Counted from the first letter of the stretch, positions 11,585-64,000 are shown. The stretch is DNA of 64,000 nucleotides from Macrostomum lignano (GCA_002269645.1 NIVC01001231.1:79440-143439); one strand, 5' to 3'. Numbers and translations: made by a program. The notes: generated from the sequence alone by a model not told the origin.

Positions 11585-14500
11585 TATGTGGCCATTTTGA
11601 TAGTGTGGCCATTTTGATAGTGTGGCCATTCTGTCGTGAGGCCGTTTTGCATATAGCTATTTTGACGTGGATTACAAGTTCTATACCTTGCTTAGGCTAT
11701 CTCTAATAGAGATACACACAATTATGCATCAAGCCATGGCAGACTCTTGCCTATCATATGATACTGTTTGCTGCTAGATTGCAAATGTTTTTGATGGCAA
11801 TAAGGACATTCAAGATTAACCTCAAAGTAGAAAGCCTTGATAGCGCAAACAATACAATTGGTGCAGAAGACAAAAGTTGTTTTGCAAAAGGATTGAAACC
11901 ATCTTCTCATGGGTCTAGGAAATTCTTCCACACATGCCTTATTTGCTAGATCTTAGCATGCGACTTTTTTCTTTTCCCAGGATCAAGGAGACAATATGAG
12001 GGCGAGGCTAACATTTTAGCAGCAAGGAGGAAGTCAATGTCCAATGAGGCTTATCACGAAGGAATGATAGCCATAACAAGGAGCAGCATAAGTGCCAGCA
12101 TTGATGGACTTGTGCGATAGTGGGAAATGCCTTGAGGCTGGCAGCAAATATTTTGAGAGATGAGATATAGAGGTCAGACGGGATCCCAATCCCAATCCTG
12201 AAATCTTGGGATCCCGAGGAAAATTGAATTCCTGCGGGACCAGAATCCCGACCCTAAAAAACTCGAGGTTCGGGAACAGGTCTTTTGATTAATAATTTAT
12301 ATAGAATTAGTGATTACTTGAAAGTATTTTGCTTTAACTTATACTCGTTACATTATTTACTTTGTTGGTTACAAAACTTCATATCAATTTTGTTGTGTTT
12401 TACTTCTTGATATTGACAATCTTTTCTCAATTTTGTTTAACTTTATAGAGTTTTATCTTTTAATATCGCTTAGTTTTATGTTTATGTTTATAATTATAGT
12501 CTAAAAGAGGCTAGACTAAGCCTCTAAAAGAGGTATAAGCATGCGAGGTTTATCTTTAGTTGTTTGCTTCTCATTCGGAAGTGTATTTGAAGAATCTGTA
12601 CTATATTATAATAGGCGTAGCTAAGCAAATATCTTAATAGGCTTAAAATAAAACTTAAAACTTAAACTTAAAAAAAATTAAAAATATTTTGCTAACAAAC
12701 TAGTACAAAAATAATACTTACGATGTAGCTTCACCCAAAAAGTACTGGCTGGATTACACTTTCAGATTGTTACACGATCGTCTTTTTCTCCACAAAAACC
12801 CTGCAGCTGAGTAAGTAATTAATACGAATTAGCGTCCGACGCACCTTTGTTTAAAAAAGTGGGACTTTTAAAATACTATAACAATAAAGTAAACTATAAG
12901 AAAGTTTGATAAAAACTCTTTAATACTAAAATCAGTCGAACTAAATAGGTTTGTGTTACAATCAGATATTGCGAGTTTTTTAATAGAAATACTAAGCATT
13001 GCCCACGTAGTTTTTACTCCCCCACCAGAACCAGAACAAAGCAAGCCATGCACTAAATTTAAGAACGTACTACTAATATAAGTTTTTTGTGCACCTTCTT
13101 AAAGAAAAACCGAGTCGGCCGCCCTCAGGACCATTAAGATATTCAACGATTCTACCAGAAGTCATTGAAACTTTCCATAAGTGCTAGTACAGTTTACATG
13201 TATTATCACACAATCAGCACAGTTCACACGTTCGGCCAGCTTGGGAAGCCTCCAAGTTTAAATAGCACGTCGACCGCATATGTATGCATCAGCTTTGACT
13301 TTGTTGGTCCAGTTTGCAAGTGGTTGTCCATCGATCACATGGTGTCACTCATTGAAGAAGGCGCGACGGCGTTTGAATGACAATTCAGAATACATGTATT
13401 TGATGGGTTCGGCCTTTTTCAGCCTACAGCTTCGGGCCTCAGAACTCAGAAATGAATCACTTAGAACTCTGGCCTCTCACTCTTGTCAGATGGTCAGCCC
13501 TATGGTAGCTAGACTGTGGGCGAGCAGCTAGGTCCTAATAGCTAAGAGAAGACAGCGAGAGACAAGCAGGGAGAATTTGAAAGGTAGAGATTAGCTAATC
13601 CGCAGATTAACTAACCCGCTGCCACCCGTCCGTGCGCCCCGGCTCACCATACCGGAGCTATCGAAATCGGACTTCCAACGTATTAGAGGGGCACTGCATT
13701 TACCTGTCATCTAGTGCCTTTTAGCTGTCTAAATCTCGAAGTCATAGCCGAATAGAAGGGACGCTGCTGGGACTAAGATCGCATTGGCCATGCAGGGACA
13801 GAGAGGACTTCTGCAGGGGGTTCTTGCGCTGGCGAGCCTCTATACACTACTAAATGTACTATTTCATTACCAAATTCCCAGCTAAGTACATGTATAAGTA
13901 CACGCAACTACACGCTTTTGGCACTAAATGTGTTAACGCGTCGACAGATAGCGATGATGTAGATGTAATGTTACTTTTGGAGACCTTCTGACTAATATTT
14001 ATCTCGTTTTAGCCGCTTAGCTGCCTGAGACCGCGCGAAAGCGCCAGTCTGGCACTAATAATTCGCATGCTTATCATGATTTCTGAGAACGACTGATTGA
14101 CTGGGAACTGCGCCGCTTCTGGTCCACTGTGACCTCTGCCCCTAGATCTAACCACTCATCTCAGCTGGCATTGCGAAAAAAGAAAGAAAACATTAAGCCT
14201 TTAACTTCCAGATTTAACTTTCTCGCTTAATCCGCAATCCTAGACACTTTAGATTGAGTTAGAGCGAATGGCTACTTTTAATATTAACTGACATGACACT
14301 TCTGCCTCGAGTTTGGCACACAAAAGCAAGTAAGCAAAAGTGCAAATCCTATCAGACTACCTAGGAAGGGGTCAGACAAAGGGCGCACCCAGTTAAGCAG
14401 GTCAAGAAAGCCTCTCACCAAACCAATCAGAGGACCTATCTGCCGGTAGCCAAGGAATCCACAGAGACCGCAGCGCTCGGATGGGATGCTGCTGCTGATC

Positions 14501-50173: not shown

Positions 50174-50409
50174 AAATTTCTACGGAATTGCTAATCATGA
50201 TGCAACAACCAACTGTAGCTAACCTAATTATAATATTCTGCATTTTAAAAAAACCCAATTCACTTTTTTGATGGAATTATGCAATTTTTTAATATTACAA
50301 TCTAAGTATTTGTTTTTCATTGCTTTCATCAAGCAAAATTGCAAGTTTTGCATCTGATTTCTATACTTTTTTTAATGAGAATTACTCGCCATGTGTTCTG
50401 CTCTGACGT

Positions 50410-51230
50410 GAATAAATAGAATGGATTGCTAATCTAGCCAATCAGAGGTGAATGAATAGAATGGATTGCTAATCTAGCCAATCAGAGGTGAATGAATAGA
50501 ATGGATTGCTAATCTAGCCAATCAGGTGAATTAATAGAATGGATTGCTAATCTAGCCAATCAGAGGTGAATGAATAGAATGGATTGCTAATCTAGCCAAT
50601 CAGAGGTGAATGAGTAGAATGGATTGCTAATCTAGCCAATCAGGTGAATTAATAGAATGGATTGCTAATCTAGCCAATCAGAGGTGAATGAGTAGAATGG
50701 ATTGCTAATCTAGCCAATCAGAGGTGAATGAATAGAATGGATTGCTAATCTAGCCAATCAGGTGAATTAATAGAATGGATTGCTAATCTAGCCAATCAGA
50801 GGTGAATGAGTAGAATGGATTGCTAATCTAGCCAATCAGAAGTGAATGAATAGAATGGATTGCTAATCTAGCCAATCAGGTGAATTAATAGAATGGATTG
50901 CTAATCTAGCCAATCAGAGGTGAATGAATAGAATGGATTGCTAATCTAGCCAATCAGAGGTGAATGAGTAGAATGGATTGCTAATCTAGCCAATCAGGTG
51001 AATTAATAGAATGGATTGCTAATCTAGCCAATCAGAGGTGAATGAGTAGAATGGATTGCTAATCTAGCCAATCAGAAGTGAATTAATAGAATGGATTGCT
51101 AATCTAGCCAATCAGAGGTGAATGAATAGAATGGATTGCTAATCTAGCCAATCAGGTGAATTAATAGAATGGATTGCTAATCTAGCCAATCAGAGGTGAA
51201 TGAATAGAATGGATTGCTAATCTAGCCAAC
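50410..51230. repeat. 40/38-bp minisatellite carrying a CCAAT box
   Basis: GAATGGATTGCTAATCTAGCCAATCAGAGGTGAATGAATA alternating with a 38-bp variant. Confidence 0.95.
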
Positions 51231-51639
51231 AGAGTTATTTTCGTTACTGCGTGTGTACTCTTGTCATGTCTAATACAATTAATCACAATATATTAAGTAC
51301 TTAATATTCTTAGGCCGCTTCTATTTTTCTAGGATGACAAGTAACAATTGCAGTTGACTGGATTGCCTGCAGTTTGATGATAAGCTGGTGATATAAGCTT
51401 TTGTTTTATTGTAATTATATGTACTTTTACTGTTTATTAACGCTTGTAAAAAAACCTAGTTTTTCCTTACGCAGCCAAGTACTGTAAACAATACAAATAT
51501 AATGTACTTATACAAGTGAGATTTTTGATGCGCTTTTTGAAGAAAGGTCTCTGTAAATGCTTTTAAAATTCCGGGTATCATCTGTGCTCACGGCTAATAC
51601 TTAAAATTATTAAAACCTTGCATTGTTTGGCTGCCAACT

Positions 51640-51975
51640 TCCCAGATTCTCAGTTGCTGGGCCAGCCTCCCAGATCCTCAGTCGCTGGGCCAGCCTCTTA
51701 GATCCTCAGTTGCTTGGCCAGCCTCTCAGATCCCCAGTTGCTGGGCCAGTCTCCCAGATCCTCAGTTGCTGGGCCAGCCTCCCAGATCCTCAGTTGCTGG
51801 GCCAGCCTCTCAGATCCTCAGTTGCTGGGCCAGCCTCCCAGATCCTTAGTTGCTGGGCCAGCCTCCCAGATCCTTAGTTGCTGGGCCAGCCTCCCAGATC
51901 CTCAGTTGCTGGGCCAGCCTCCCAGATCCTCAGTTGCTGGGCCAGCCTCTCAGATCCTCAGTTGCTGGGCCAGCC
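51640..51975. repeat. 28-bp minisatellite
   Basis: CTCAGTTGCTGGGCCAGCCTCCCAGATC. Confidence 0.93.
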
Positions 51976-52125: not shown

Positions 52126-55100
52126 TCAGAGACGCGTATTGTCATTGTTGAAAGAGAGCCCGGTGCACTGGTTCTCCTTCCACCAGCCGCCCAGGTGAAT
52201 TCCGTAGTAATTCTTGTGCGCCTCCACGCAGGCCATCAGGTTGGAAGGGCTCAGGCAGGACCGCCAGTTGTCCGAGGAGTTGGCGCAGCTGCTGTCCTCG
52301 TTAATCGGCGTGCCGGTGCAGATGCGGTGGCCGCCGCTGCCGGGCAGCATGTCGGCAGTTCTCGCGAAGAAGACCTCGGTGCCGTGATGGTAGGGGAAGC
52401 CGAGGTGCCCGGAGCAGCTGAAGGGCGCAACCAGACGGGAGACGCCGCGGCTCGACAGCATCACCGGCGAGCAGATTGGCAGGTGCACGATGAGGTCCTG
52501 GAGAGTTTGAGCACATTTTTTATCCTGGAATCACGGTTACTTATTAGACTAGCTGAGGAAATGCCTCATATTGAGAGCACTTGGCCATCTGAGAAACTCC
52601 TCATTGACAGCACTTGGCCATCTGAGCAACTCCTCATTGAGAGCACTTGGCCATCTGAGCAACTCCTCATTGAGAGCACTTGGCCATCTGAGCAACTCAT
52701 CATTGAGAGCACTTGGCCATCTGAGCAACTCCTCATTGAGAGCACTTGGCCATCTTAGCAACTCCTCATTGAGAGCACTTGGCCATCTGAGCAACTCCTC
52801 ATTGAGAGCACTTGGCCATCTGAGCAATTCCTCATTGACAGCACTTGGCCATCTGAGCAACTCCTCATTGAGAGCACTTGGCCATCTGAGAAACTCCTCA
52901 TTGAGAGCACTTGGCCATCTGAGAAACTCATCATTGAGAGCACTTGGCTATCTGAGCAACTCATCATTGAGAGCACTTGGCCATCTGAGAAACTCCTCAT
53001 TGAGAGCACTTGGCCATCTGAGCAACTCCTCATTGAGAGCACTTGGCCATCTGAGCAACTCCTCATTGACAGCACTTGGCCATCTGAGCAACTCCTCATT
53101 GAGAGCACTTGGCCATCTGAGCAACTCATCATTGAGAGCACTTGGCCATCTGAGCAACTCCTCATTGACAGCACTTGGCCATCTGAGCAACTCATCATTG
53201 AGAGCACTTGGCCATCTGAGCAACTCATCATTGACAGCACTTGGCCATCTGAGCAATTCCTCGTTGAGCAAGATTTGCAATAGTCTCACATTTCCGTGCA
53301 CTACTCGCCAGCTGTTGGGCACCAGCCTGTCGAATGCCCTGGCAAAGAAATAGTCACCAACTCTCGGCTCGCCGAGCGAGTAGAAGGCCAGACGGCCGGG
53401 CGTCACGCCATCAATGGCGGCCAGACTGGCTGCTGCGAGGGCCGCCATTGCGCCTCCGAGTGAGTGTCCGGTGACCAACAGGCTGTGGTCAGGGTTGGCC
53501 CGCATCAGCGCCAGCGTCGGCTCGTGAAGCTGCGGCCAGAGCGCTTTGAATCCGTTGCTAAAGTACGCCTGTACTTTGCCGCCGATCGGGAAGGCCTCCT
53601 TGGGCATGGCGAGGCCCATGAGGCCCTCAACCAGCAGTTGGCTGCTGCCGGTGGTGCCACGAAAGGCGAGCACGATCAGCTTGCGGTCCGGCAGGCGGCC
53701 TGTGGTTCAGGTTTTGGAACTTTTATTTTTGTTTCTCTATCAATGACTTCTTTAAGTCTGTATGGGGGTTTTGCCCAGCAAACTCGAACTTGAAAACAAA
53801 CAGCAGCAAAACAGAGTAGGAAAAGCGTCTCAGGGCGCGCCTCAAGACTTGGGATCGAACGTCAGAATCTGAAGCGCTGGCGTCAGCAGCTGCAACTCTT
53901 TTATCAGCTGTGACCAGCAGGACTTGACAAGACTCTGTGACCTACCTGCTGGAGTCGCCGACGTCACGACAGGTGGCTAAGTCTGCATTTTTGATGACTT
54001 CCCGCTCAGGGGGTGTCTGAACTGGCGGGATGTCTCTCCGACATTTGCGGAACGGCGTCACAGAAGACACAGTGGTAGAGAGCCGCAGCCTGTCTGTCAT
54101 GCATACTGTATGACTGATGGTTGCTGTTGGTAGAATAGAATCTACAACTTAGCTTTTCGGCTTAGATGTAGCTTACTCGTAACAGAAGCATGCAACAGTA
54201 ATTTCTAGCCTTTGCTCTGCTTACATGTCCTCCGTGAGAAAGAGACATTATTTCGGAGCAAAGTCAGCAAATCTAGCTAGAGAACTCACCAACAAAGCCG
54301 GAGCACTCGTCGTGCAGCATGTCGCAGGCTGCCACGCCTTTGACGACGTCAACTAGACGGCCTCCGCCTGCCTGCGCCGCCGGCGGGAAGTTCGCCAGAC
54401 AGGGCGCCGGCTCCGGAGCGTAGGCAGCGCCCGAGATAGCGGCGGCCAGCTCGCTCAGCCGGGCGTCGAACTCGTAGTGGCCGTTGTCCGGCTCGTGGCA
54501 CTTGCCGGGATCCACGACCTCCTGCGCATGATTGAACTTAATTACTTATTGAAGCGCCTTACGCTTGTAATTTGAAAACTCAGTTATAGAGTTTGAGAGG
54601 TCAAAACTAGCATAAAGCTCATAAAGCTTGATTATGAGCTAGTTTTTATCATTTAGTTCTTAAACTCAGCTGCAGTTTTTGTCGTTTGGTATCCATAATA
54701 TGATATCCATCGGAAGGCTTGACTTGTCGACTGTCGGGTGTGAATCCTTAATTTCATGGCAAATCCCATCTCTTCGTGAATACAAAAAAGTATCTTTAAA
54801 AAAAGCTCAGAAGTGCAAGGAAGACAATTTGTTTTAGGAAGTACGAGCTATTTTTTAAAGCTTTCGTTGTCCATATCGAGCAAGAAGAATACTCGTAACT
54901 CCTGTTGTAACCAATAAGACGCTTTGGTTATAAAGGTTAGCGCAAAGGCTTACAGCGGCCCTTTCACACCATCATCAGTCCTCAAGGGCGCCAATCGGAC
55001 GACAAGCCCATTGCGGCCAATATCTGTGCACGAGCCCTAAATTAATGCGGCCACGCACTGAATCGAATCCGGTACTTTGTCGCAAGATTTAGCTTGTAGA

Positions 55101-55359
55101 CGCGTTAGACTGAACCTGGCAAAAGGATAGGGAATTGCCCCCGTACCTGCGAGGACGAGCACTTGTTGACGAGGGAGCCGGGCTCGTGGCAGGCCAGGTC
55201 GATGGGGCACCATCGGCAGGAGGTGCCCAGCCAGGACTGGCTGGTGGCGCACTTGGCGCAGTCGGTGTGACTGGAGCAGCTCTCCCGCCTGCCGGCGCGG
55301 CCAGCCGACGATGCCAGCAGTAGCGCCGGGAGCAGCGCAAGAATCAACGGCCGCAACAT
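52126..55359 (-). CDS. Secreted class-3 (fungal-type) lipase with an N-terminal PSI-like domain (exons 55359-55147, 54521-54290, 53699-53290, 52497-52126)
   Basis: Signal peptide; C..C..C....CRWC....C; IVLAFRGT, VTGHSLGGAMA, FYSLGEPRVGD, WRVVHGN|DLIVHLP, YHHGTEV, HKNYYG; splice phases 0, 1, 0 are consistent. Confidence 0.9.
52561..53262. repeat. 33-bp minisatellite in lipase intron 3
   Basis: CTCCTCATTGAGAGCACTTGGCCATCTGAGCAA. Confidence 0.95.
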
Positions 55360-56196
55360 TTCCTGGCTGCGTGTACTTTTGTGCTACTTTTCTGTAGGAA
55401 GTCCTTTCTGCTCCTGGCTTATGAAGCCCAAATAGTATCTGGAGAAACTTTAGTCCGTAGCAATGGATAAGCGGACAATCGGCCTATGGAGAGGCTTTTT
55501 TGTTCGCTAAAATAATCGACTCAAGAGGCCATCTGCCAGCACTCTCAGGCAGTTCGAAGGTTGAATCAGCTTTTGGCAAATGCCGTGCGTCTGGTACGTG
55601 CCGCTGCTATTATATAAATTGTATCGCATATCACAGATTTAGTATACTGAATAACATGACTTGAACAACTGCGTGGCTTCATGACCTATACTCTGTCAGA
55701 TTTGCCAATTCAAGCAGTTTAAATAGCTGATCTCGCATCACGTGAGGAGCATGTAACCATGACCTGGAAGAAATCCCTCTAATGTCGATCTGAGCATTCG
55801 CTTTGAGCATTCAATGAACGTGCTACGAGTGTTATAGTGACGCAATTACTTCCATGAGCAATCGCATGCATGCATAAACTGTACAAAAGCACGTCACATT
55901 GCTTCTGCTTGAATGTATTGGCGAAGTTAAATGATTTATTGCAAAACACATTCTAAATAAGCATTACAGATCAATTCCGACAGCCAAGCGGTAATTAGTA
56001 ACGGCGCATAAGTTGCGTAGGCAATCGCGCTGAATAGGAGCTGGATAATCCATTGTTACGTCATGTTAAATTTTGAATCAAAATCTCACAAGGCAATATG
56101 TTACATGAAAGTTCAGAGTACAAAGCTGTTAAAAATTAGATGCATTTGAAGAGGTTTGGAGCAGTCGGGACTGCATGAATTGCAGCTGTTGATCTG

Positions 56197-57369
56197 TCAC
56201 CAAAATCGACCCCGAGCGCCCAGGTGAGCAGTCAGCGCCCTCCTCGGACACACCTCCGGGTCCTTGACGTCCCTGTGGAGTAGCACGATGCCGCGCTGCC
56301 GAGCGGTCTCAGTCGCTGTCTCAAGATAGAGGCTGGATTCGAACTTGCGATCGAAGATGTCGAGGTAGGACAGACTCTCGGCCAGGCAGAGAAACTGCAG
56401 CAGGGCTTCGTCGCTGATGCGGGGCACACCGAAAAGGTTGAGGTGTCGCAGGTGCGGGCAGACTGTGCGGATCGACTCCAGGCTGCGGCCGGTGAGGTTG
56501 TGACAGCAGGTGAGATTCAGCGTCTCCAGCTGGGGGAGGCCCTGCAGCAGCGATCTCAGGTTGGAGTCGGTCATTAGGTAGCCATGGCGACGTAGATTCA
56601 GGATACGCAGGCCGGGGCATCGGGTGCGAACGATGGCGAGCGACTTCGGTGTCAGGTAGCAGCCTTCGAGGTCCAGGATTTCAAGTGAAGAGGACAGTAT
56701 GCAATCCAGAGTTTGATTGTTGAGCATCTTTTTACTGCGAAGCCGCTGTATGAGTTGGCTGCGGGAGAACAAAAGTTTTTCATGCTTTGCATAATAATTC
56801 GACTCTGTTTGTCCATATTTATTGTGTAGCAACTTTTGCTTACCTTATCAGATAGTCGTCATTGAAATCGGAGAAGTCGTATTGCTTAATGTTCATGGCA
56901 ATGGCATCCAGGCATATTTCTCCAAGTTTTTTTACTCTTGAATTGTCATGAAATGGCTTCTAAAAAGGAAGGAAGTAGTTTTACGTTTAAATCTAACTTG
57001 AACTGTTAATTGTTGTCATTTAGCTGAAAATATCTATGAATGGCATCTTTAAGACCGAAGTGATACTTACCTCTTCAAGCCGCCGTCCAAACGTAGCTCG
57101 AACAATTGCTGACCATTTAAAGCATCCTGCTTTATTTCAAATCGTTTCACCCCTCGAAAGGAGACATCTTCTGTTATTACTGACTTCAACAATTCTTGTG
57201 CGTATCCTTTAAGTAAACTGCACTCAAGAAGCTCGTCGAGATCTACAAAGTCCCCGTCGTTAACTGCAAGACCCTCTTTGGCAGCACCATATCGAAGTAA
57301 ATAAGCAAGAATTTTTCCTATCCGTTTGCGCACAATGGGGTCTAGCTGGCCCCTCAGCTTGTCTTTCAT
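56197..57369 (-). CDS. Tpt1/KptA N-lobe-like domain fused to AMN1/FBXL-like leucine-rich repeats (exons 57369-57071, 56959-56844, 56758-56197; one-base deletion at about 57106)
   Basis: KILAYLLRYGAAKEGL..DGDFVDLDELL..KRFEI..(I)VRATFG; VKKLGEICLDAI; LEILDLEGC, CPGLRILNL, LETLNLTCC, CPHLRHLNL. Exon 1 is 299 nt and needs +1 to match the phase-0 acceptor. Confidence 0.72.
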
Positions 57370-57931
57370 TTTTGAAGATGCTTGATTTTTTGGTCGTATT
57401 TAGATTTGGTCTAAATAATAGTAAATATTACTCGCAATAATATAATGACAGGAAAAGAACTACTTTCTAAGGTTAAAAATGTCCACCTTGCTTTTATTTA
57501 GCTGTAACGAAAATTATTATTCTAAAATGTACAAAAATGTAATAATGCAACAAGCATGCAATCCTTAAAAAAGATTGCGCAAGCAAAACCATATTCGTGC
57601 CTAATGGACATTAGTGTTTCCATGATTCTATTTTAAGATTTTTGCTAGCAAAATTGCAAAAAAACTGATAAGGCCGCTTGTGTATCCAAATGTAGTTAAA
57701 AGATAGTCTATATATGACTTTTATTTTGTTAATATCGGCTGTTTTCCTGTAAAAAAGAGATCGTTTTTACAAACATTTTTAATTCGGTTATAAGACGAAT
57801 TAAATCGGATTGCAGTTGTGACAGTCTAGTGTCCTTTTTAATTTGAGTGGGTTTGATTTCGACAAATCGAACTAGTAGTGCGGACGTACGGAGTAAGTAA
57901 TTTTCGAGCTCTAAGTGCTGCTGTTAACAGC

Positions 57932-60900
57932 ATGCAAGTTTTGCGGGTGTTATTTATCTTTCTGGCTGTTGCATGCGTTAATGCTCAAGCTGGGCAAAGG
58001 GAGCCACAAAGATTTCAAAAGCCAAAGCTTGCGTCATTCACGATGCCAACCTTGAAAGTTCTTTATTGGTAAGAGCTCTTTTTATTTTGATGGCTAATAT
58101 TGAAATTAGTCTTTAGGTCCAAAACTAAGAGATAGGTCAGCCTTATGTATGAAGTTATGTTATGTAGGCCCTAGGCGGCCAGGCCTACTTAATAAATTAA
58201 ATAATAATACCTTACTTTGGGCTACACTTAGGCCTAGGCCTAGTTTAACATTTAAGAATAAGTATTTAAAAAAATTGCCATTTTTTGTGCTTTGTATAAT
58301 AGGGGGTTAGTTTCTTTTAGTGATAATCCATAGTTATCATAGTTTGGAAGGCAACATATATGCCAAGATTTCCTGGTGTATGACAAGGGTCTTACCATTT
58401 TTCAGCATATACCAAGGTATATCCTGGCATACATGGCACAGTAGAGTAGATACATCATGTTAAATGATAATTTTTTTATATTGGCACACAAACCTGGTCT
58501 AGTGTGGTGTACAAATGAGGTTGTCATTTTTTCTAGCATTAAACCTGGCGTACACTAATATACCATCCAAACTATGGCATAATTAGGATTAAATAAGGCA
58601 ATACTCAGCAAATTTCACCAATTTTTCTAGTGCAAATAGGCTATTTCTCCAATGCACTAGGCATCCTTTGTTCTTATAGTTATATTGCATTTTTTGAAGT
58701 TTTTTTGCTTTTGCTTAATTATAGCACAGATTTCCTTTTTTAGTATATAGGATTATGCTAAGTATATGCCCAAGCCAGGCGCAGATCTAGAAAATTTTTG
58801 AGTAGGAGGCCAAGCTATACCAAGCACTATAACCCTTATTGGAAAATAGACCTGGTATAGTAATAGGCCAAAAAAGTATGATCAAAATTTCTTTAGCTGC
58901 GGCTAAGGAAGGGGGCCATGGCCCCCCTCTGGATCTGCCCCTGGCCCAAGCAAAAATTGAGTAAGTACAAAAGTATACCAAAAAATAAGTACATACCTAA
59001 TAAATGACGTTTGAGTTGCAATAATAAATAACCTTTTTGCATTGCATAAGGGGTATGCAGTCATTTTGTCTGCTACCTTTTTGTCTACTGACAGACAAAA
59101 CAACTTTTTAAGAAGAAAAATGAAGGTATAGCTACATAGCTAGTAAAGCTAATTTTCTATAATTATTATTGCAAATCATGCAAAGAGTTAAAATGGGGTG
59201 TCAGTTTTTCTAAGTGTAATTTTGTTTATAGCAATATTTCAAAGAAATATGATATAAATTTTAAATATCCATAGAAAAGAAGAACGTATACTGATAAGAA
59301 AGGATGCTGTAGTTATGAATATTGAAGGCAGAGACAGAGCTCATTGTTAAAAATCATTTGCTGGCTATTATGAGCATTATTATGACCCGATCCAATGATA
59401 ATTAATGCATTTTCATTAGGAACAATTATTCAGCTTACAAAATTCATATACAAAAAGTTAGTGTATGTGTATATGTATACTATGGGTCCCTTGGGAAAAA
59501 TATTTTTAGATTATACACTTGTGCTTCTAGTTCTAATATAATGTACTTTTTAAGATATAAAGGTTTTATTTTTATTATTATATGTATCAGCCTCATACAA
59601 CAACAACAACAAGGTACTGCTCCCGCCGGCCACGCAGTAGCCAGAAAGGGGGGAGCAGTCAGAAAGTGCGTCTCTGGGCCATTGCCCTCAGGTTGAAGGT
59701 GGCAATTCTAAACGCGCTTCCTGGTACAGCTGGGGCCCGGACTTGTTGGGCCTCACGGTCTCCTGCGCCACTAGGCAGAACCAATTGGATAGGGGCCGGG
59801 TCAAGCAAACTTGCTCCCAGTCTTTCCACTTCCACCTCGAAGTGTCTATGCCTCTGGGCTTGCCACTCTCCCATCTATCACACCTGGCAAGCTCTAGGCA
59901 GTCCAGCACCCAAACCCCCAATCACCCCATCTGTGGTCTGCACTGAGGGGAGCAGAAACACAACACTGTTGTTAAGAAACTCATAGAGTTGACTATAACA
60001 ATTGTTATTATTTATTTAGTCTTATAGTCTTAATTAACAAAGTCTATTTAAAGTCTGTTATGATTAATATAATAGAATTATACCACAATGTTTTGCACAG
60101 ATTTGAATTTAATATGTGCATCTGTAGTCATGCCCCCTAAATCTTTACCTGTATATAGAGCATTAAGTGTTTAATTATAGGTTTTTAGTTTTCTTTATTG
60201 CTAGTCATGTGGCACTTACTATAGCTTTCTTAAACCCATTTTATATACTGTGATATCCCAATTTTAGCATACATAAATTGATTTAATGTCAGTTCAAGTC
60301 TTTATATTTTACTTTTAATTCCCATATTTTTAGTTACTCCTGAGGCTACCGCCGGGTGTTTGAGGAATTTGCCCACATCTTGTCGCAGAAGTTCCCCACT
60401 CTGCACATCGAAGGGGACAATTATCCTCCACCCACATGGCGGCAACAACTGTGCAGCACTCTGTCAGTCATCAAATTCGCCATCATCATTGCTATCCTAT
60501 CCGGCTTGGATCCGTTCCCCTACCTGGGCGTGGCCACTCCCCACGTGTTCACCCTGGCGCAGGAGAACAAGCTCTACGCCTGCATGATGTTGTTCTTTGT
60601 TGGCAACGCGATCGAGGGCCAGCTCATCTCCACTGGGGCTTTTGAAGTGTCCTACAATGGTCAGTGTGAATGGGTGAATGGGCAGGGGGTTTGCGGGCGA
60701 CATCCTCCCGCATCCAGCACTGAGGCGATTCTCTGTGCCCTGGGGTTGGCCCTCATGGCTGTGAATGGCACAACTCCCCCCCCCCAATATGAAACCTACG
60801 CCAGCATCCATCATCAACCCGGTAAGCTTAACCCAACCCGCAGACATGGTCATCTGGTCCAAACTAGAGAACGGCCGCGTGCCCTCGCCAAGCGAACTGA

Positions 60901-60956
60901 TCAACATTATCGACAGCCAGTTATCGATGAGCTCATCGTCCATTCCTAGTTCATAG
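57932..60956 (+). CDS. SELENOT: Selenoprotein T (exons 57932-58068, 60334-60659, 60844-60956; Sec TGA at 60341-60343)
   Basis: Signal peptide, LKVLYC|YSUGYRRVFEEF (CxxU), IEGDNYPP, ENKLYACMMLFFVGN.IEGQLISTGAFEV, IWSKLENGRVPSP.EL. Confidence 0.95.
58776..58943. mobile_element. hAT-type MITE in SELENOT intron 1
   Basis: TIRs CAGGCGCAGATCTAG / CAGGGGCAGATCCAG; perfect 8-bp TSD GCCCAAGC at 58768-58775 and 58944-58951. Confidence 0.85.
59597..59975 (-). mobile_element. Short non-autonomous LINE derivative (APE start plus (TTG)n tail)
   Basis: GC-rich island in an AT-rich intron; reads ..GSAFRIATFNLRAM.. (start of the LINE endonuclease), then ends in a (TTG)n tail. Confidence 0.5.
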
Positions 60957-61124: not shown

Positions 61125-61735
61125 AAAGGATTCCCCTTTTGGTATCCAAGGGAAATCCTAGTTGCTATACGGGAAGGATTCCCCTTTCAGTATCCAAGGG
61201 AAATCCTAGTTGCTATACAGGAAGGATTCCCCTTTCGGTATCCAAGGGAAATCCTAGTTGCTATACAGGAAGGATTCCCCTTTCGGTATCTAAGGGAAAT
61301 CCTAGTTGCTATACAGGAAGGATTCCCCTTTCGGTATCCAAGGGAAATCCTAGTTGCTATACAGGAAGGATTCCCCTTTCGGTATCTAAGGGAAATCCTA
61401 GTTGCTATACAGGAAGGATTCCCCTTTCGGTATCCAAGGGAAATCCTAGTTGCTATACAGGAAGGATTCCCCTTTCGGTATCCAAGGGAAATCCTAGTTG
61501 CTATACAGAAAGGATTCCCCTTTCGGTATCCAAGGGAAATCCTAGTTGCTATACAGGAAGGATTCCCCTTTCGGTATCTAAGGGAAATCCTAGTTGCTAT
61601 ACAGGAAGGATTCCCCTTTCGGTATCCAAGGGAAATCCTAGTTGCTATACAGAAAGGATTCCCCTTTCGGTATCCAAGGGAAATCCTAGTTGCTATACAG
61701 GAAGGATTCCCCTTTCGGTATCCCAGGGAAATCCC
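61125..61735. repeat. 48-bp hairpin-forming minisatellite between the SELENOT stop and the SECIS
   Basis: GGAAGGATTCCCCTTTCGGTATCCAAGGGAAATCCTAGTTGCTATACA, about 13 copies. Confidence 0.95.
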
Positions 61736-61864
61736 AGTTAATATGCGACAAAAATATCAAATCCAGCAGTATCCAAGGTAAAATCCATTCGAACAATCTG
61801 CATTACTTAAGATAAAATGCAAATGTCAGAAGCGACTCGCTGCTCTAACCAAACAGAACTCACA

Positions 61865-62550: not shown

Positions 62551-64000
62551 ATGACCACAGCTCACAGGCCGACATTCGACACCGCCCGCGGCGGGCAGGG
62601 CATGCGCGAGCGCGACCTGAGCGCCCAGTCCAAGCAGTACAGCTCGCGCGATCTGCCCAGCCACACCCGCCTGAAATACCGCCAAGACGGCCAGGGCACC
62701 GCCGAGGATGCCCGAGTCAGCAGCCGCGACTTCAAGCGCGACCTGGAGGACCGCGAGCGCCGACATCGCGGCGGCGGCGGCGGCAGCAGCGCCGATGAGC
62801 CATCGACCTCCTCTTCGTCGTCGAAGCGGGCCCGTCTGACCGACGGCTCCGCTGCGGCGCTGCCGGCCAACCTGGACGCCGACGACGCGGCCGTGGCCGC
62901 CGCCGACTTGGATTCGGACGCCGACTCCGCCGACGAAGGCGACGAGGACGAAGCGGCGCGAGTTGATGGCCGAGCTGGCCAAGATTCGGCGCGAGCGGGA
63001 GGCGGAGGCCGCGCGCAGGTGGGTCTTGAAGTGTCCGTGGGCATTGTCCTTGTAGACTCGGCTGGGATTTCCCTTCTAGAGTCAGCTGGGATTTCCCTTC
63101 TAGAGTCAGCTGGGATTTCCCTTCTAGAGTCAGCTGGGATTTCCCTTCTAGAGTCAGCTGGGATTTCCCTTCTAGAGTCAGCTGGGATTTCCCTTCTAGA
63201 GTCAGCTAGGATTTCCCTTGTAGAGTCAGCTGGGATTTCCCTTCTAGAGTCAGCTGGGATTTCACTTCTAGAGTCGGCTGGATTTCCCTTCTAGAGTCAG
63301 CTGGGATTTCCCTTCTAGAGTTGGCTGGGATTTCCCTTCTAGAGTCGGCTGGGATTTCCCTTCTAGAGTCAGCTAGGATTTCCCTTGTAGAGTCAGCTGG
63401 GATTTCCCTTGTAGAGTCAGCTGGGATTTCCCTTCTAGAGTCGGCTGGGATTTCCTTCTAGAGTCGGCTGGGATTTCCCTTGTAGAGTCAGCTGGGATTT
63501 TCCTTGTAGAATAAGCTGGGATTTCCCTTGTAGAGTCGGCTGGGATTTCCCTTGTAGAGTCAGCTGGGATTTCCCTTGTAGAATAAGCTGGGATTTCCCT
63601 TGTAGAGTCGGCTGGGATTTCCCTTGTAGAGTCAGCTGGGATTTCCCTTGTAGAATAAGCTGGAATTTCCCTTGTAGAGTCAGCTGGGATTTCCCTTGTA
63701 GAGTCAGCTGTTTCCCTTCTAGAGTCAGCTGGGATTTCCCTTCTAGAGTCAGCTGGATTTCCCTCTAGAGTCAGCTGGATTTCCCTTCTAGAGTCCCTTC
63801 ACCATTCTCCAGTCACTAATTCCCCCTTTCCCCTGCAGAGAGGCTGAGCGCAGGCAGATGAGGAGCGCATCCGCACGGAGAACATTCTCAAGGGCAACCC
63901 GCTGCTTAAAATCCAAGCAGGGCGCCTCGTCCAGCGGCTCGGGAGGCGGCGACTTCAAGTGAAGCGTCGCTGGAACGACGACGTCGTATTTAAAAACTGC
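62551..64000 (+). CDS. CWC15: Spliceosome-associated protein CWC15 (exons 62551-63018 and 63839 to window end; several 1-nt indels)
   Basis: [41 protein letters not shown]; [13 protein letters not shown]; [16 protein letters not shown]; [14 protein letters not shown]. Frame breaks at about 62957, 63857 and 63908-63958. Confidence 0.92.
63055..63795. repeat. 24-bp minisatellite in the CWC15 intron
   Basis: GAGTCAGCTGGGATTTCCCTTCTA. Confidence 0.95.

What the first reader, a model, noticed from the sequence alone, without database searches (positions are those of the whole stretch)
56197..57369. Tpt1/KptA RNA-binding N-lobe fused to AMN1-like LRRs, without the NAD-binding lobe
Seen: exon 1 follows the Tpt1 N-lobe pattern (K.L..LLR.GA...GL...DG.V....LL...KRFE...RA..G), but with LRY for the conserved LRH and ATFGR for ANQGH, and is followed directly by LRRs. 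Known: Tpt1 needs both lobes to transfer an RNA 2'-phosphate to NAD+. Inference: a catalytically dead RNA-end or phosphate-binding sensor joined to an LRR adaptor, a fusion I do not recognise. It is head-to-head with SELENOT (about 560 bp apart).
Basis: partly seen in the sequence, partly recalled or inferred. Interest (0 to 1): 0.7.

Follow-up and report, generated by a model that had tools for sequence, protein, structure and literature searches.

The report
Tpt1 RNA-lobe fused to leucine-rich repeats
This flatworm gene encodes half of an RNA-repair enzyme (the phosphate-recognising half of Tpt1, without the NAD-binding catalytic half) joined to a protein-binding leucine-rich-repeat domain; the same uncharacterised fusion is conserved from jellyfish to amphioxus, so it is probably a non-enzymatic reader or adaptor.

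Summary
On the minus strand, 57369-56197 is a three-exon GT-AG gene of Macrostomum lignano. Exon 1 encodes a Tpt1/KptA RNA-lobe: Pfam PF01885 matches profile positions 4-84 of 177, above the gathering score, and the top 21 Foldseek PDB hits of the domain model are all Tpt1/TRPT1. Exons 2-3 encode a helical cap and six FBXL2/SKP2-like LRRs. There is no NAD+ lobe and no F-box.

The frameshift is a one-base loss in a T run between 57104 and 57103. Two intact copies in assembly GCA_002269645.1 carry T or C there and are otherwise identical across the gene. An assembly error is the likely cause.

The fusion is not flatworm-specific. Full-length orthologues occur in annelids, molluscs, a nematode, a starfish, an acorn worm, amphioxus and cnidarians, and the intron at the domain boundary is shared across four phyla. 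Capsaspora and a metagenomic protist carry the same two domains plus a C-terminal NADAR ADP-ribosylhydrolase, and they keep the canonical LRH.

The phosphate-contacting residues K19, R26 and R76 are invariant. His to Tyr is the usual animal state.

The protein cannot be a 2'-phosphotransferase, although UniRef names it one. The most likely function, untested, is a phosphate-ligand reader coupled to a protein-recruiting LRR. I found no literature on it. The SELENOT adjacency is real but not conserved.

The parts
57071..57369 (-). Exon 1 (299 nt here, 300 nt in intact copies). It runs from the ATG at 57369 to the donor GAAGAG|gtaagt and encodes residues 1-100, the complete Tpt1/KptA RNA-lobe (winged helix).
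57103..57105 (-). Frameshift site. The minus strand reads CAATT-GTTCG. One base is missing between 57104 and 57103. The intact copies read CAATTTGTTCG (L002) or CAATTCGTTCG (L001), and both encode QQFVRATFGRR.
56960..57070 (-). Intron 1 (111 nt, GT-AG, phase 0), placed exactly at the boundary between the RNA-lobe and the cap. The same intron position occurs in Capitella, Pinctada and Branchiostoma.
56844..56959 (-). Exon 2 (116 nt), residues about 101-139. It encodes the linker and the first helices of the cap that precedes the LRRs (VKKLGEICLDAIAMNIKQYDFSDFNDDYLI).
56759..56843 (-). Intron 2 (85 nt, GT-AG, phase 2). The position is shared with Capitella.
56197..56758 (-). Exon 3 (562 nt including the TGA stop at 56199-56197). 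It encodes the rest of the cap, six cysteine-containing LRRs of about 26 residues (beta strands at residues 166, 191, 218, 244, 270 and 297) and a C-terminal tail ending in GRFW.
57370..57932 (.). The 563-bp intergenic region shared head-to-head with SELENOT (SELENOT ATG at 57933). It is presumably a bidirectional promoter, which was not tested.

Best explanation
Shown:
- The locus is the M. lignano member (BOX15_Mlig021724g1, 325 aa) of a conserved holozoan protein family.
- The family consists of the N-terminal RNA/phosphate-recognition lobe of Tpt1/TRPT1, a short flexible linker, a three-helix cap and six FBXL-type LRRs.
- The NAD+-binding ADP-ribosyltransferase lobe is entirely absent, so the protein cannot transfer a 2'-phosphate or ADP-ribosylate anything.
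- The one-base frameshift in this window is most likely a homopolymer error of the assembly.

Inferred:
- The protein works as a non-catalytic reader and adaptor.
- The retained pocket is K19, R26, R76 and aromatic F94. These correspond to TkoTpt1 K10, R17, R65 and Y77, which hold the 2'- and 3'-phosphates and stack the base.
- This pocket binds a phosphomonoester-bearing ligand. Candidates are an RNA 2'-PO4 junction, a 5'- or 3'-phosphate end, or a pAp- or ADP-ribose-phosphate-like nucleotide.
- The LRR solenoid brings in a protein partner, possibly a cullin-type ubiquitin ligase.
- The ancestral form, still present in Capsaspora, carried a C-terminal NADAR ADP-ribosylhydrolase. The lobe therefore probably began as the nucleic-acid-targeting module of a de-ADP-ribosylase.
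For: Identity and architecture:
- Pfam covers only positions 4-84 of 177 of PF01885, plus LRR_4 and LRR_6.
- By PDB sequence search, FBXL2 hits at 1e-13 and Tpt1 matches residues 14-85.
- The full-length AF2 model has pLDDT 85 with a low-confidence linker at residues 96-105.
- Foldseek on the full model returns FBXL2, FBXL17, SKP2 and human TRPT1. The N-domain model returns Tpt1 for its top 21 hits.

Conservation:
- Orthologues of 300-335 aa occur in Capitella, Dimorphilus, bivalves, a chiton, gastropods, Soboliphyme, Patiria, Saccoglossus, three Branchiostoma species, Rhopilema and Hydractinia.
- The intron at the domain boundary is shared by flatworm, annelid, bivalve and amphioxus.
- The N-lobe is the most conserved part: 55% mean pairwise identity against 45% for the LRRs. 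Helix alpha1 is 74% identical, with 13 of 23 columns invariant.
- K19, R26 and R76 are invariant.

The roles of the equivalent residues, and of the missing NAD-lobe residues, come from PMC6333775 and PMC12678800. [quoted passage not shown]

NADAR fusion: Capsaspora CAOG_08465 and P0052 match PF08719 at E 1.3e-29. P0052 is one uninterrupted ORF.

RNA support: the annotation is RNA-seq-guided, and a 1376-bp contig carries an unbroken 320-aa ORF.

Frameshift: the window is almost identical to L002 over about 6.7 kb. It differs inside the gene only at this site, where the two other copies carry a synonymous T or C.
Against:
- The N-lobe is not strongly basic. Its net charge is 0 in M. lignano and ranges from -4 to +8 across the family. 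That argues against a broad RNA-binding surface.
- The His of the tetrad is replaced by Tyr in most animals and by Lys-Arg in Hydractinia. The Lys63 equivalent is not conserved in position.
- NADARs tested so far do not act on phosphate-linked ADP-ribose (PMC11833690). The link between the lobe's phosphate pocket and the NADAR activity is therefore not straightforward.
- No F-box was found, and no statistically supported BC-box.
- Without reads, a real frameshift allele cannot be excluded.
Confidence: 0.55

Rival explanations
1. The copy in this window is a true pseudogene or a null allele. The one-base deletion is real and truncates the protein after the RNA-lobe's beta strands.
For: As assembled, the frame breaks after Q88 and a stop follows in exon 2. 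M. lignano DV1 carries duplicated chromosomes and redundant gene copies, so one copy could decay (PMC5730564).
Against: Apart from this base, the 1174-bp gene, introns included, is identical to two intact copies. The window matches L002 almost perfectly over about 6.7 kb, so it is the same locus. The loss sits in a T run at a site where the copies differ (T or C), which is a typical consensus error of long-read assemblies. No second lesion is present.
Confidence: 0.12
2. The Tpt1-derived lobe no longer binds any phosphate ligand. It has been re-used as a structural or protein-protein interaction winged helix, and the whole protein is simply an LRR scaffold.
For: The His of the tetrad is replaced. 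The lobe is near neutral in net charge. Winged helices often mediate protein contacts.
Against: The three basic residues that hold the phosphates and stack the base in Tpt1 are invariant from cnidarians to chordates. They lie in the most conserved segment of the protein. Pre-animal members keep the complete LRH and GHS motifs next to a nucleic-acid ADP-ribosylhydrolase domain.
Confidence: 0.22
3. It is a substrate receptor of an Elongin BC-cullin ubiquitin ligase (or of an SCF-like ligase), and the Tpt1 lobe selects the substrate. This is a specific version of the adaptor idea.
For: The closest solved LRR relatives are all ubiquitin-ligase receptors: FBXL2, FBXL17, SKP2, MAX2, TIR1 and Rad7. 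The cap helix shows a BC-box-like pattern, L112-x3-C116-x3-I120, with L112 invariant. It is followed by FPDEFL. One family member hits Pfam LRR_Zer-1. That the pattern resembles BC and Cul2 boxes is from my own memory and is not a test.
Against: No F-box appears in Pfam at E up to 1. Profile searches of the cap against PDB sequences found nothing significant. Rad7 scored only E 2.9 and was lost with a shorter profile. The Cys position is Thr, Ser, Gly or Ala in several members.
Confidence: 0.15
4. It is a working RNA 2'-phosphotransferase, as the automatic UniRef name '2'-phosphotransferase' implies.
For: Only the Pfam PF01885 hit that triggers the name.
Against: The match stops at profile position 84 of 177. 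The NAD+ lobe is absent, and with it the fourth tetrad Arg, the second Arg and the His that contact NAD+ or ADP-ribose. It is replaced by a confidently modelled LRR solenoid.
Confidence: 0.01
5. The fusion is a gene-model artefact that joins two neighbouring genes.
For: Exon 1 and exon 3 differ strongly in GC content, 44% against 59%.
Against: The same architecture and length occur in more than 15 species from 8 phyla. The intron at the junction is conserved. Uninterrupted ORFs span both domains in L003 and L005. The M. lignano model derives from RNA-seq.
Confidence: 0.01

Closest known systems
Tpt1 / KptA / TRPT1 RNA 2'-phosphotransferase (PF01885)
   Same: The N-terminal winged-helix RNA lobe has the same fold (rmsd about 2 A), about 25-30% identity, and the same K, R and R phosphate and base contacts. 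It is closest to the eukaryotic TRPT1 branch.
   Different: The whole NAD+ (ART-fold) lobe is missing. The tetrad His is Tyr. The QGHS motif is replaced by FGRR. The protein therefore cannot catalyse either step of the Tpt1 reaction.
F-box/LRR proteins FBXL2, FBXL17 and SKP2
   Same: A solenoid of six cysteine-containing LRRs of about 26 residues. These are the best PDB matches by sequence (FBXL2, 1e-13) and by fold (8.6e-7).
   Different: No F-box was detected. A different three-helix cap precedes the repeats, and an RNA lobe sits where the F-box would be.
AMN1
   Same: A small LRR protein of the same repeat subtype, without an F-box and with a helical N-terminal cap. This resemblance is from my memory and was not tested.
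   Different: AMN1 has no Tpt1-derived domain. No AMN1 sequence was available here to compare, and none of the named near hits was AMN1.
Capsaspora owczarzaki CAOG_08465 and metagenomic P0052 (Tpt1 RNA-lobe + LRR + NADAR)
   Same: The same RNA-lobe, cap and LRR arrangement, alignable end to end with the animal proteins.
   Different: They keep LRH and the (Y)GHS motif. They carry a C-terminal NADAR ADP-ribosylhydrolase domain that all animal members lack.
Fission-yeast Tpt1-Yae1 fusion (PMC12810181)
   Same: A precedent for Tpt1 sequence joined to an unrelated protein-interaction domain (title and abstract only).
   Different: There the complete, active two-lobe enzyme is fused. Here only the RNA lobe survives.

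Membership tests
Tpt1/KptA/TRPT1 RNA 2'-phosphotransferase | N-terminal RNA-binding lobe (winged helix, about 85 residues) | tested here: met
   Pfam PF01885 covers positions 4-84, above the gathering score. A profile against PDB sequences gives E 5e-9. The top 21 Foldseek hits are all Tpt1.
Tpt1/KptA/TRPT1 RNA 2'-phosphotransferase | C-terminal NAD+-binding (ADP-ribosyltransferase-fold) lobe | tested here: not met
   The Pfam match ends at position 84 of 177. Residues 105-300 are a confidently modelled LRR solenoid.
Tpt1/KptA/TRPT1 RNA 2'-phosphotransferase | Arg-His-Arg-Arg catalytic tetrad | tested here: not met
   R26 and R76 are present and invariant. The His position is Y27. The fourth Arg lies in the missing lobe.
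Tpt1/KptA/TRPT1 RNA 2'-phosphotransferase | NAD+-dependent removal of an RNA 2'-phosphate, or 5'-phosphate ADP-ribosylation | not testable with these tools
   This needs an enzyme assay or yeast tpt1 complementation. The architecture predicts no activity.
F-box/LRR (FBXL) ubiquitin-ligase receptors | Cysteine-containing LRR solenoid | tested here: met
   FBXL2 at 1e-13 by sequence. FBXL2, FBXL17 and SKP2 by fold.
F-box/LRR (FBXL) ubiquitin-ligase receptors | F-box that binds SKP1 | tested here: not met
   No F-box family appears in Pfam at E up to 1, either for the whole protein or for the isolated cap.
AMN1-like LRR proteins | Specific sequence relationship to AMN1 | not tested
   No AMN1 sequence was retrieved. 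The named neighbours were FBXL7-like, SKP2B-like and FBXL2/20.
BC-box / VHL-box cullin receptors (ZYG11, Rad7 type) | BC-box L-x3-C-x3-[AILV] that binds Elongin C, followed by a cullin box | tested here: inconclusive
   The pattern L112..C116..I120 is present and L112 is invariant. Profile searches of the cap gave no significant PDB hit: Rad7 at E 2.9, then nothing.
Holozoan Tpt1-lobe + LRR + NADAR proteins (Capsaspora CAOG_08465 type) | C-terminal NADAR domain (PF08719) | tested here: not met
   NADAR was found only in P0052 and P0129, 2 of 15 members. It is absent from the window's protein and from all animal members.

The most novel reading that the evidence does not exclude
Animals outside vertebrates, insects and rhabditid nematodes keep a dedicated non-catalytic reader of the ligand that Tpt1 recognises. 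That ligand would be an RNA 2'-phosphate or a related phosphate or ADP-ribose-phosphate mark. It would then be an RNA-damage or RNA-modification sensor descended from a de-ADP-ribosylating enzyme. This would imply that such marks exist and are signalled in animal cells.
Probability: 0.2. Interest if true: 0.8.

Novelty: new variant of a known kind. Interest (0 to 1): 0.55.

Why it matters
What Tpt1/TRPT1 does in organisms without fungal-type tRNA ligation is an acknowledged puzzle (abstracts of PMC6573784 and PMC6333775).

Here the substrate-recognition half of that enzyme has been kept on its own for the whole history of animals. It is its protein's most conserved part. In the closest unicellular relatives it is tied to a NADAR ADP-ribosylhydrolase. 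This suggests that the ligand it recognises has a biological role beyond tRNA splicing.

The family also offers a natural separation-of-function tool, because the isolated lobe could serve as an affinity probe for 2'-phosphorylated or phosphate-ended RNA.

On the practical side, database names such as '2'-phosphotransferase', 'FBXL7-like' and 'SKP2B-like' for this family are misleading.

Tried and rejected
1. The third homologue search used the Capsaspora and protist alignment to map the NADAR-bearing form. The spread of that architecture is therefore known only from two lineages.

2. Profile searches of the cap (residues 104-172 and 104-145) against PDB sequences found nothing significant. 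A Pfam scan of the cap gave only a sub-threshold TTI1 hit and no F-box. The BC-box idea remains only a pattern.

3. I looked up ten non-family LRR hits whose match includes the cap, to find the donor LRR family. They are amoebozoan, archaeal-MAG and metagenomic multi-LRR proteins, one of them named FBXL2/20. This was uninformative, and none was AMN1.

4. The SELENOT adjacency was tested as a functional clue. Neighbours differ in Capitella, Branchiostoma and Pinctada, so it was rejected as incidental.

5. The literature was searched with NADAR/KptA/LRR and with PF01885/Tpt1-like/KptA-like. No description of the fusion turned up. A Mytilus expression table lists a PF01885 gene among its top regulated genes, but its identity is unknown.

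6. Two readings were rejected: that this is a working phosphotransferase, and that this is a chimeric gene model (see the rival explanations).

Full report
**Observation.** The interval 56197-57369 is the exact stop-to-start span of a gene on the minus strand.
- Exon 1 is 57369-57071, with donor GAAGAG|gtaagt.
- Exon 2 is 56959-56844, with acceptor tttttag and donor ATAAG|gtaagc.
- Exon 3 is 56758-56197, with acceptor cccgcag and the TGA stop at 56199-56197.
- The introns are 111 and 85 nt.

Exon 1 translates to MKDKLRGQLDPIVRKRIGKILAYLLRYGAAKEGLAVNDGDFVDLDELLECSLLKGYAQELLKSVITEDVSFRGVKRFEIKQDALNGQQ. After a frame change it continues VRATFGRRLEE.

**The frameshift.** As assembled, the coding sequence is 977 nt. 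It leaves frame after Q88 and meets a stop in exon 2. The protein with one base restored as X is identical to GenBank BOX15_Mlig021724g1 of Macrostomum lignano (P0001, 325 aa) at every other residue.

Two loci of assembly GCA_002269645.1 encode that protein. Over the 1174-bp gene, introns included, they differ from the window at a single position. The window reads CAATT-GTTCG, L002 reads CAATTTGTTCG and L001 reads CAATTCGTTCG. The T/C difference is synonymous (TTT or TTC, Phe).

The window is almost base-for-base L002 from about 53750 to 60500, with some ten differences. It is therefore the same locus in another assembly or haplotype. A one-base loss in a T run, at a site where the duplicated copies differ, is what a long-read consensus error looks like. 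I read it as an artefact. Only reads can settle it.

**Is the Tpt1 resemblance real?** Yes.
- Pfam PTS_2-RNA (PF01885) matches residues 15-99 at 31.6-33.4 bits (gathering score 26), but only to profile positions 4-84 of 177.
- A profile of twelve family N-domains finds yeast, human and mouse TRPT1 chains at E 5e-9 to 4e-8, and archaeal and bacterial Tpt1 at 1e-5 to 1e-3. The domain is therefore closest to the eukaryotic branch.
- An AlphaFold model of residues 1-103 (pLDDT 83.5) has Tpt1/KptA/TRPT1 structures as its 21 best PDB matches. TM-scores normalised to the query are 0.51-0.69, and rmsd is 1.7-3.4 A (1.7-2.5 for most) over 80-91 aligned columns. Generic winged helices follow only at E>0.1.

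Published structures put the RNA lobe at residues 1-85/86 and the NAD+ lobe after it (PMC6333775; PMC12678800). The family sequence stops resembling Tpt1 exactly at that boundary.

**The rest of the protein.** The full-length model (pLDDT 85, pTM 0.65) has a low-confidence linker at residues 96-105. Three cap helices follow (112-122, 135-147, 153-159). Then come six strand-helix repeats with strands at residues 166, 191, 218, 244, 270 and 297.

The best matches are ubiquitin-ligase LRR receptors.
- By sequence: FBXL2 at 1e-13, FBXL5 and FBXL17.
- By fold: FBXL2, FBXL17, MAX2, SKP2, KDM2B, TIR1/COI1 and Rad7. Human TRPT1 also appears for the N-domain, at rmsd 2.3 A over 81 columns.

No F-box family is detected, even at E up to 1. 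'AMN1-like' could not be tested directly. What is shown is the cysteine-containing FBXL subtype without an F-box.

**Distribution.** The fusion is old and widespread.
- Word-indexed searches and one exhaustive HMMER search found full-length, collinear members of 300-335 aa. They come from Capitella and Dimorphilus (annelids), Dreissena, Mya, Pinctada and Sinanodonta (bivalves), Liolophura (chiton), and Elysia, Plakobranchus and Lottia (gastropods). Further members are in Soboliphyme (nematode), Patiria (starfish), Saccoglossus (acorn worm), three Branchiostoma species, and the cnidarians Rhopilema and Hydractinia.
- No vertebrate, insect or rhabditid nematode appeared among the family-level hits that I could name. 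This is an absence of evidence, not a proof of loss.
- The phase-0 intron that separates the RNA lobe from the cap is at the same place in Macrostomum (RRLEE|KPFH), Capitella (RRMER|NVIH), Pinctada (RNFET|NPCH) and Branchiostoma (RRFER|NPYH). A second intron is shared with Capitella.
- A 1376-bp contig from a public sequencing run carries an uninterrupted 320-aa ORF with both domains and flanking untranslated sequence, as a transcript would.
- The M. lignano annotation was built from RNA-seq-guided transcripts (PMC5730564).

**Pre-animal relatives.** Capsaspora owczarzaki CAOG_08465 (585 aa) and a metagenomic protist protein (P0052, 448 aa, one unbroken ORF beside a CHORD-domain gene) align with the animal proteins through the RNA lobe, cap and LRRs. 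They then continue into a NADAR domain (PF08719, E 1.3e-29).
- These two, and a third metagenomic member without NADAR (P0083), keep the canonical LRH and (Y)GHS motifs.
- Nearly all animal members have LRY and FGRR/FCRN. The exceptions are Dimorphilus (LRH) and Hydractinia (LKR).
- NADAR enzymes remove ADP-ribose from guanine bases in DNA and RNA, were inactive on phosphate-linked ADP-ribose, and are reported to have no vertebrate orthologues (PMC11833690).

**Residues.**
- In Thermococcus Tpt1, the N-lobe residues Ser9 and Lys10 stack or bond the junction base.
- Arg17 binds both the 2'- and the 3'-phosphate. His18 binds only the 3'-phosphate. Lys63 and Arg65 bind the 2'-phosphate. Tyr77 also lines the site.
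- His98, Arg118 and Arg136 belong to the NAD+ lobe.
[quoted passage not shown] It also shows a 2',3',5'-phosphorylated nucleotide held by N-lobe residues in a complex solved without NAD+ (PMC12678800).

Using the HMMER alignment to that protein, the equivalents here are as follows.

| TkoTpt1 | This family | State |
|---|---|---|
| Lys10 | K19 | invariant |
| Arg17 | R26 | invariant |
| His18 | Y27 | His replaced by Tyr |
| Lys63 | V74 | not conserved, but K75 next to it is usually basic |
| Arg65 | R76 | invariant |
| Tyr77 | F94 | Phe or Tyr in most members |

The N-lobe is the most conserved region of the family, at 55% mean pairwise identity against 45% for the LRRs. Helix alpha1, which carries K19 and R26, is 74% identical with 13 of 23 columns invariant. 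Against a general RNA-binding role, the lobe's net charge is about zero in M. lignano and ranges from -4 to +8 in the family.

**Interpretation.**
- Shown: the protein has the Tpt1 phosphate-recognition lobe and lacks everything needed to bind NAD+. It is therefore not a phosphotransferase or an ADP-ribosyltransferase, whatever UniRef's automatic name says.
- Inferred: the strict conservation of the phosphate-contacting side chains over more than half a billion years means the pocket still binds something phosphorylated. The LRR solenoid, a protein-binding module whose nearest relatives are ligase receptors, passes that recognition on to a partner.
- The Capsaspora architecture suggests the lobe first served to bring a NADAR hydrolase to nucleic acid. 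Animals then lost the hydrolase and altered the 3'-phosphate-contacting His. That change may have shifted ligand preference.
- A BC-box-like pattern in the first cap helix (L112-x3-C116-x3-I120, followed by FPDEFL) hints at an Elongin-cullin connection, but it failed to reach significance in any search. I keep it as a lead only.

**Context.** SELENOT is indeed head-to-head.
- Exon 1 is 57933-58070.
- Exon 2 starts at 60334 and gives C-Y-S-U-G-Y-RRVFEEF, with the selenocysteine TGA at 60342-60344.
- The Rdx-family core follows.

The neighbours of the orthologues in Capitella, Pinctada and Branchiostoma are unrelated genes. The adjacency therefore carries no functional message.

**Novelty and score.** The sequence is already in public databases, and its Pfam domains are precomputed there. 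I found no paper that describes the family, the loss of the NAD+ lobe, or the NADAR-bearing ancestor. It is a new variant of known kinds: a pseudo-enzyme domain derived from Tpt1 joined to a known repeat type. It is not a new category. The interest is moderate to good. The family bears on the unresolved question of what Tpt1-type recognition is for in animals, and it gives a clean experimental handle. Its function remains inference.

Noticed in passing
window 57933-58070 and 60334-60949 (+): A SELENOT gene. Exon 1 encodes a signal peptide and ends in phase 2. Exon 2 gives CYSUGYRRVFEEF, with an in-frame TGA selenocysteine codon at 60342-60344. The public annotation of the same locus lists only a 62-aa Rdx fragment.
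   Followed up: partly
window 50408-51234, 51633-51975, 52570-53268, 61126-61739, 63048-63795: Five long tandem arrays, with periods of 40, 28, 33, 48 and 24 nt and 12-31 copies each. The 48-nt array is open in two reading frames. These arrays account for most of the divergence between the window and the two public copies.
   Followed up: partly
window 56197-57369 (-): Exon 3 is 59% G+C, while exons 1 and 2 of the same gene are 44% and 37%. I have no explanation. The join is nevertheless supported by orthologues and by RNA-based annotation.
   Followed up: no
window 55105-55359 (-): The next gene downstream on the same strand starts at 55359 with a signal peptide and a cysteine-rich exon. That exon has only a very weak PSI-domain hit (E 0.34). 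The public copies annotate a 408-aa Lipase_3 protein there.
   Followed up: no
L001 compared with window about 58500-60500: The second M. lignano copy (NIVC01001230) matches the window from about 53750 to 58500, then diverges completely inside the SELENOT intron. The two duplicated loci therefore differ by a large insertion or rearrangement there.
   Followed up: no
L008 (Branchiostoma floridae) about 12000-13500: The amphioxus orthologue's intron holds several tandem copies of the cap exon (…CMLHKLRRRRQLTNAVLRSLL…). This explains the 487-aa hybrid-species model P0011, which has internally repeated segments.
   Followed up: partly
family alignment A2/A3, C-terminus (window 56200-56270): The mollusc members share a conserved C-terminal tail, ENPxxxLPxFGKxW. 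Capitella (ending GQFW) and M. lignano (ending GRFW) keep only the end of it. Deuterostome and cnidarian members lack it.
   Followed up: no
PMC11817969, Table 3: A Mytilus chilensis transplant experiment lists a PF01885-annotated gene among its most strongly regulated transcripts, next to TLR3, HEPN and B-box genes. Whether it is this family or true TRPT1 is unknown.
   Followed up: no
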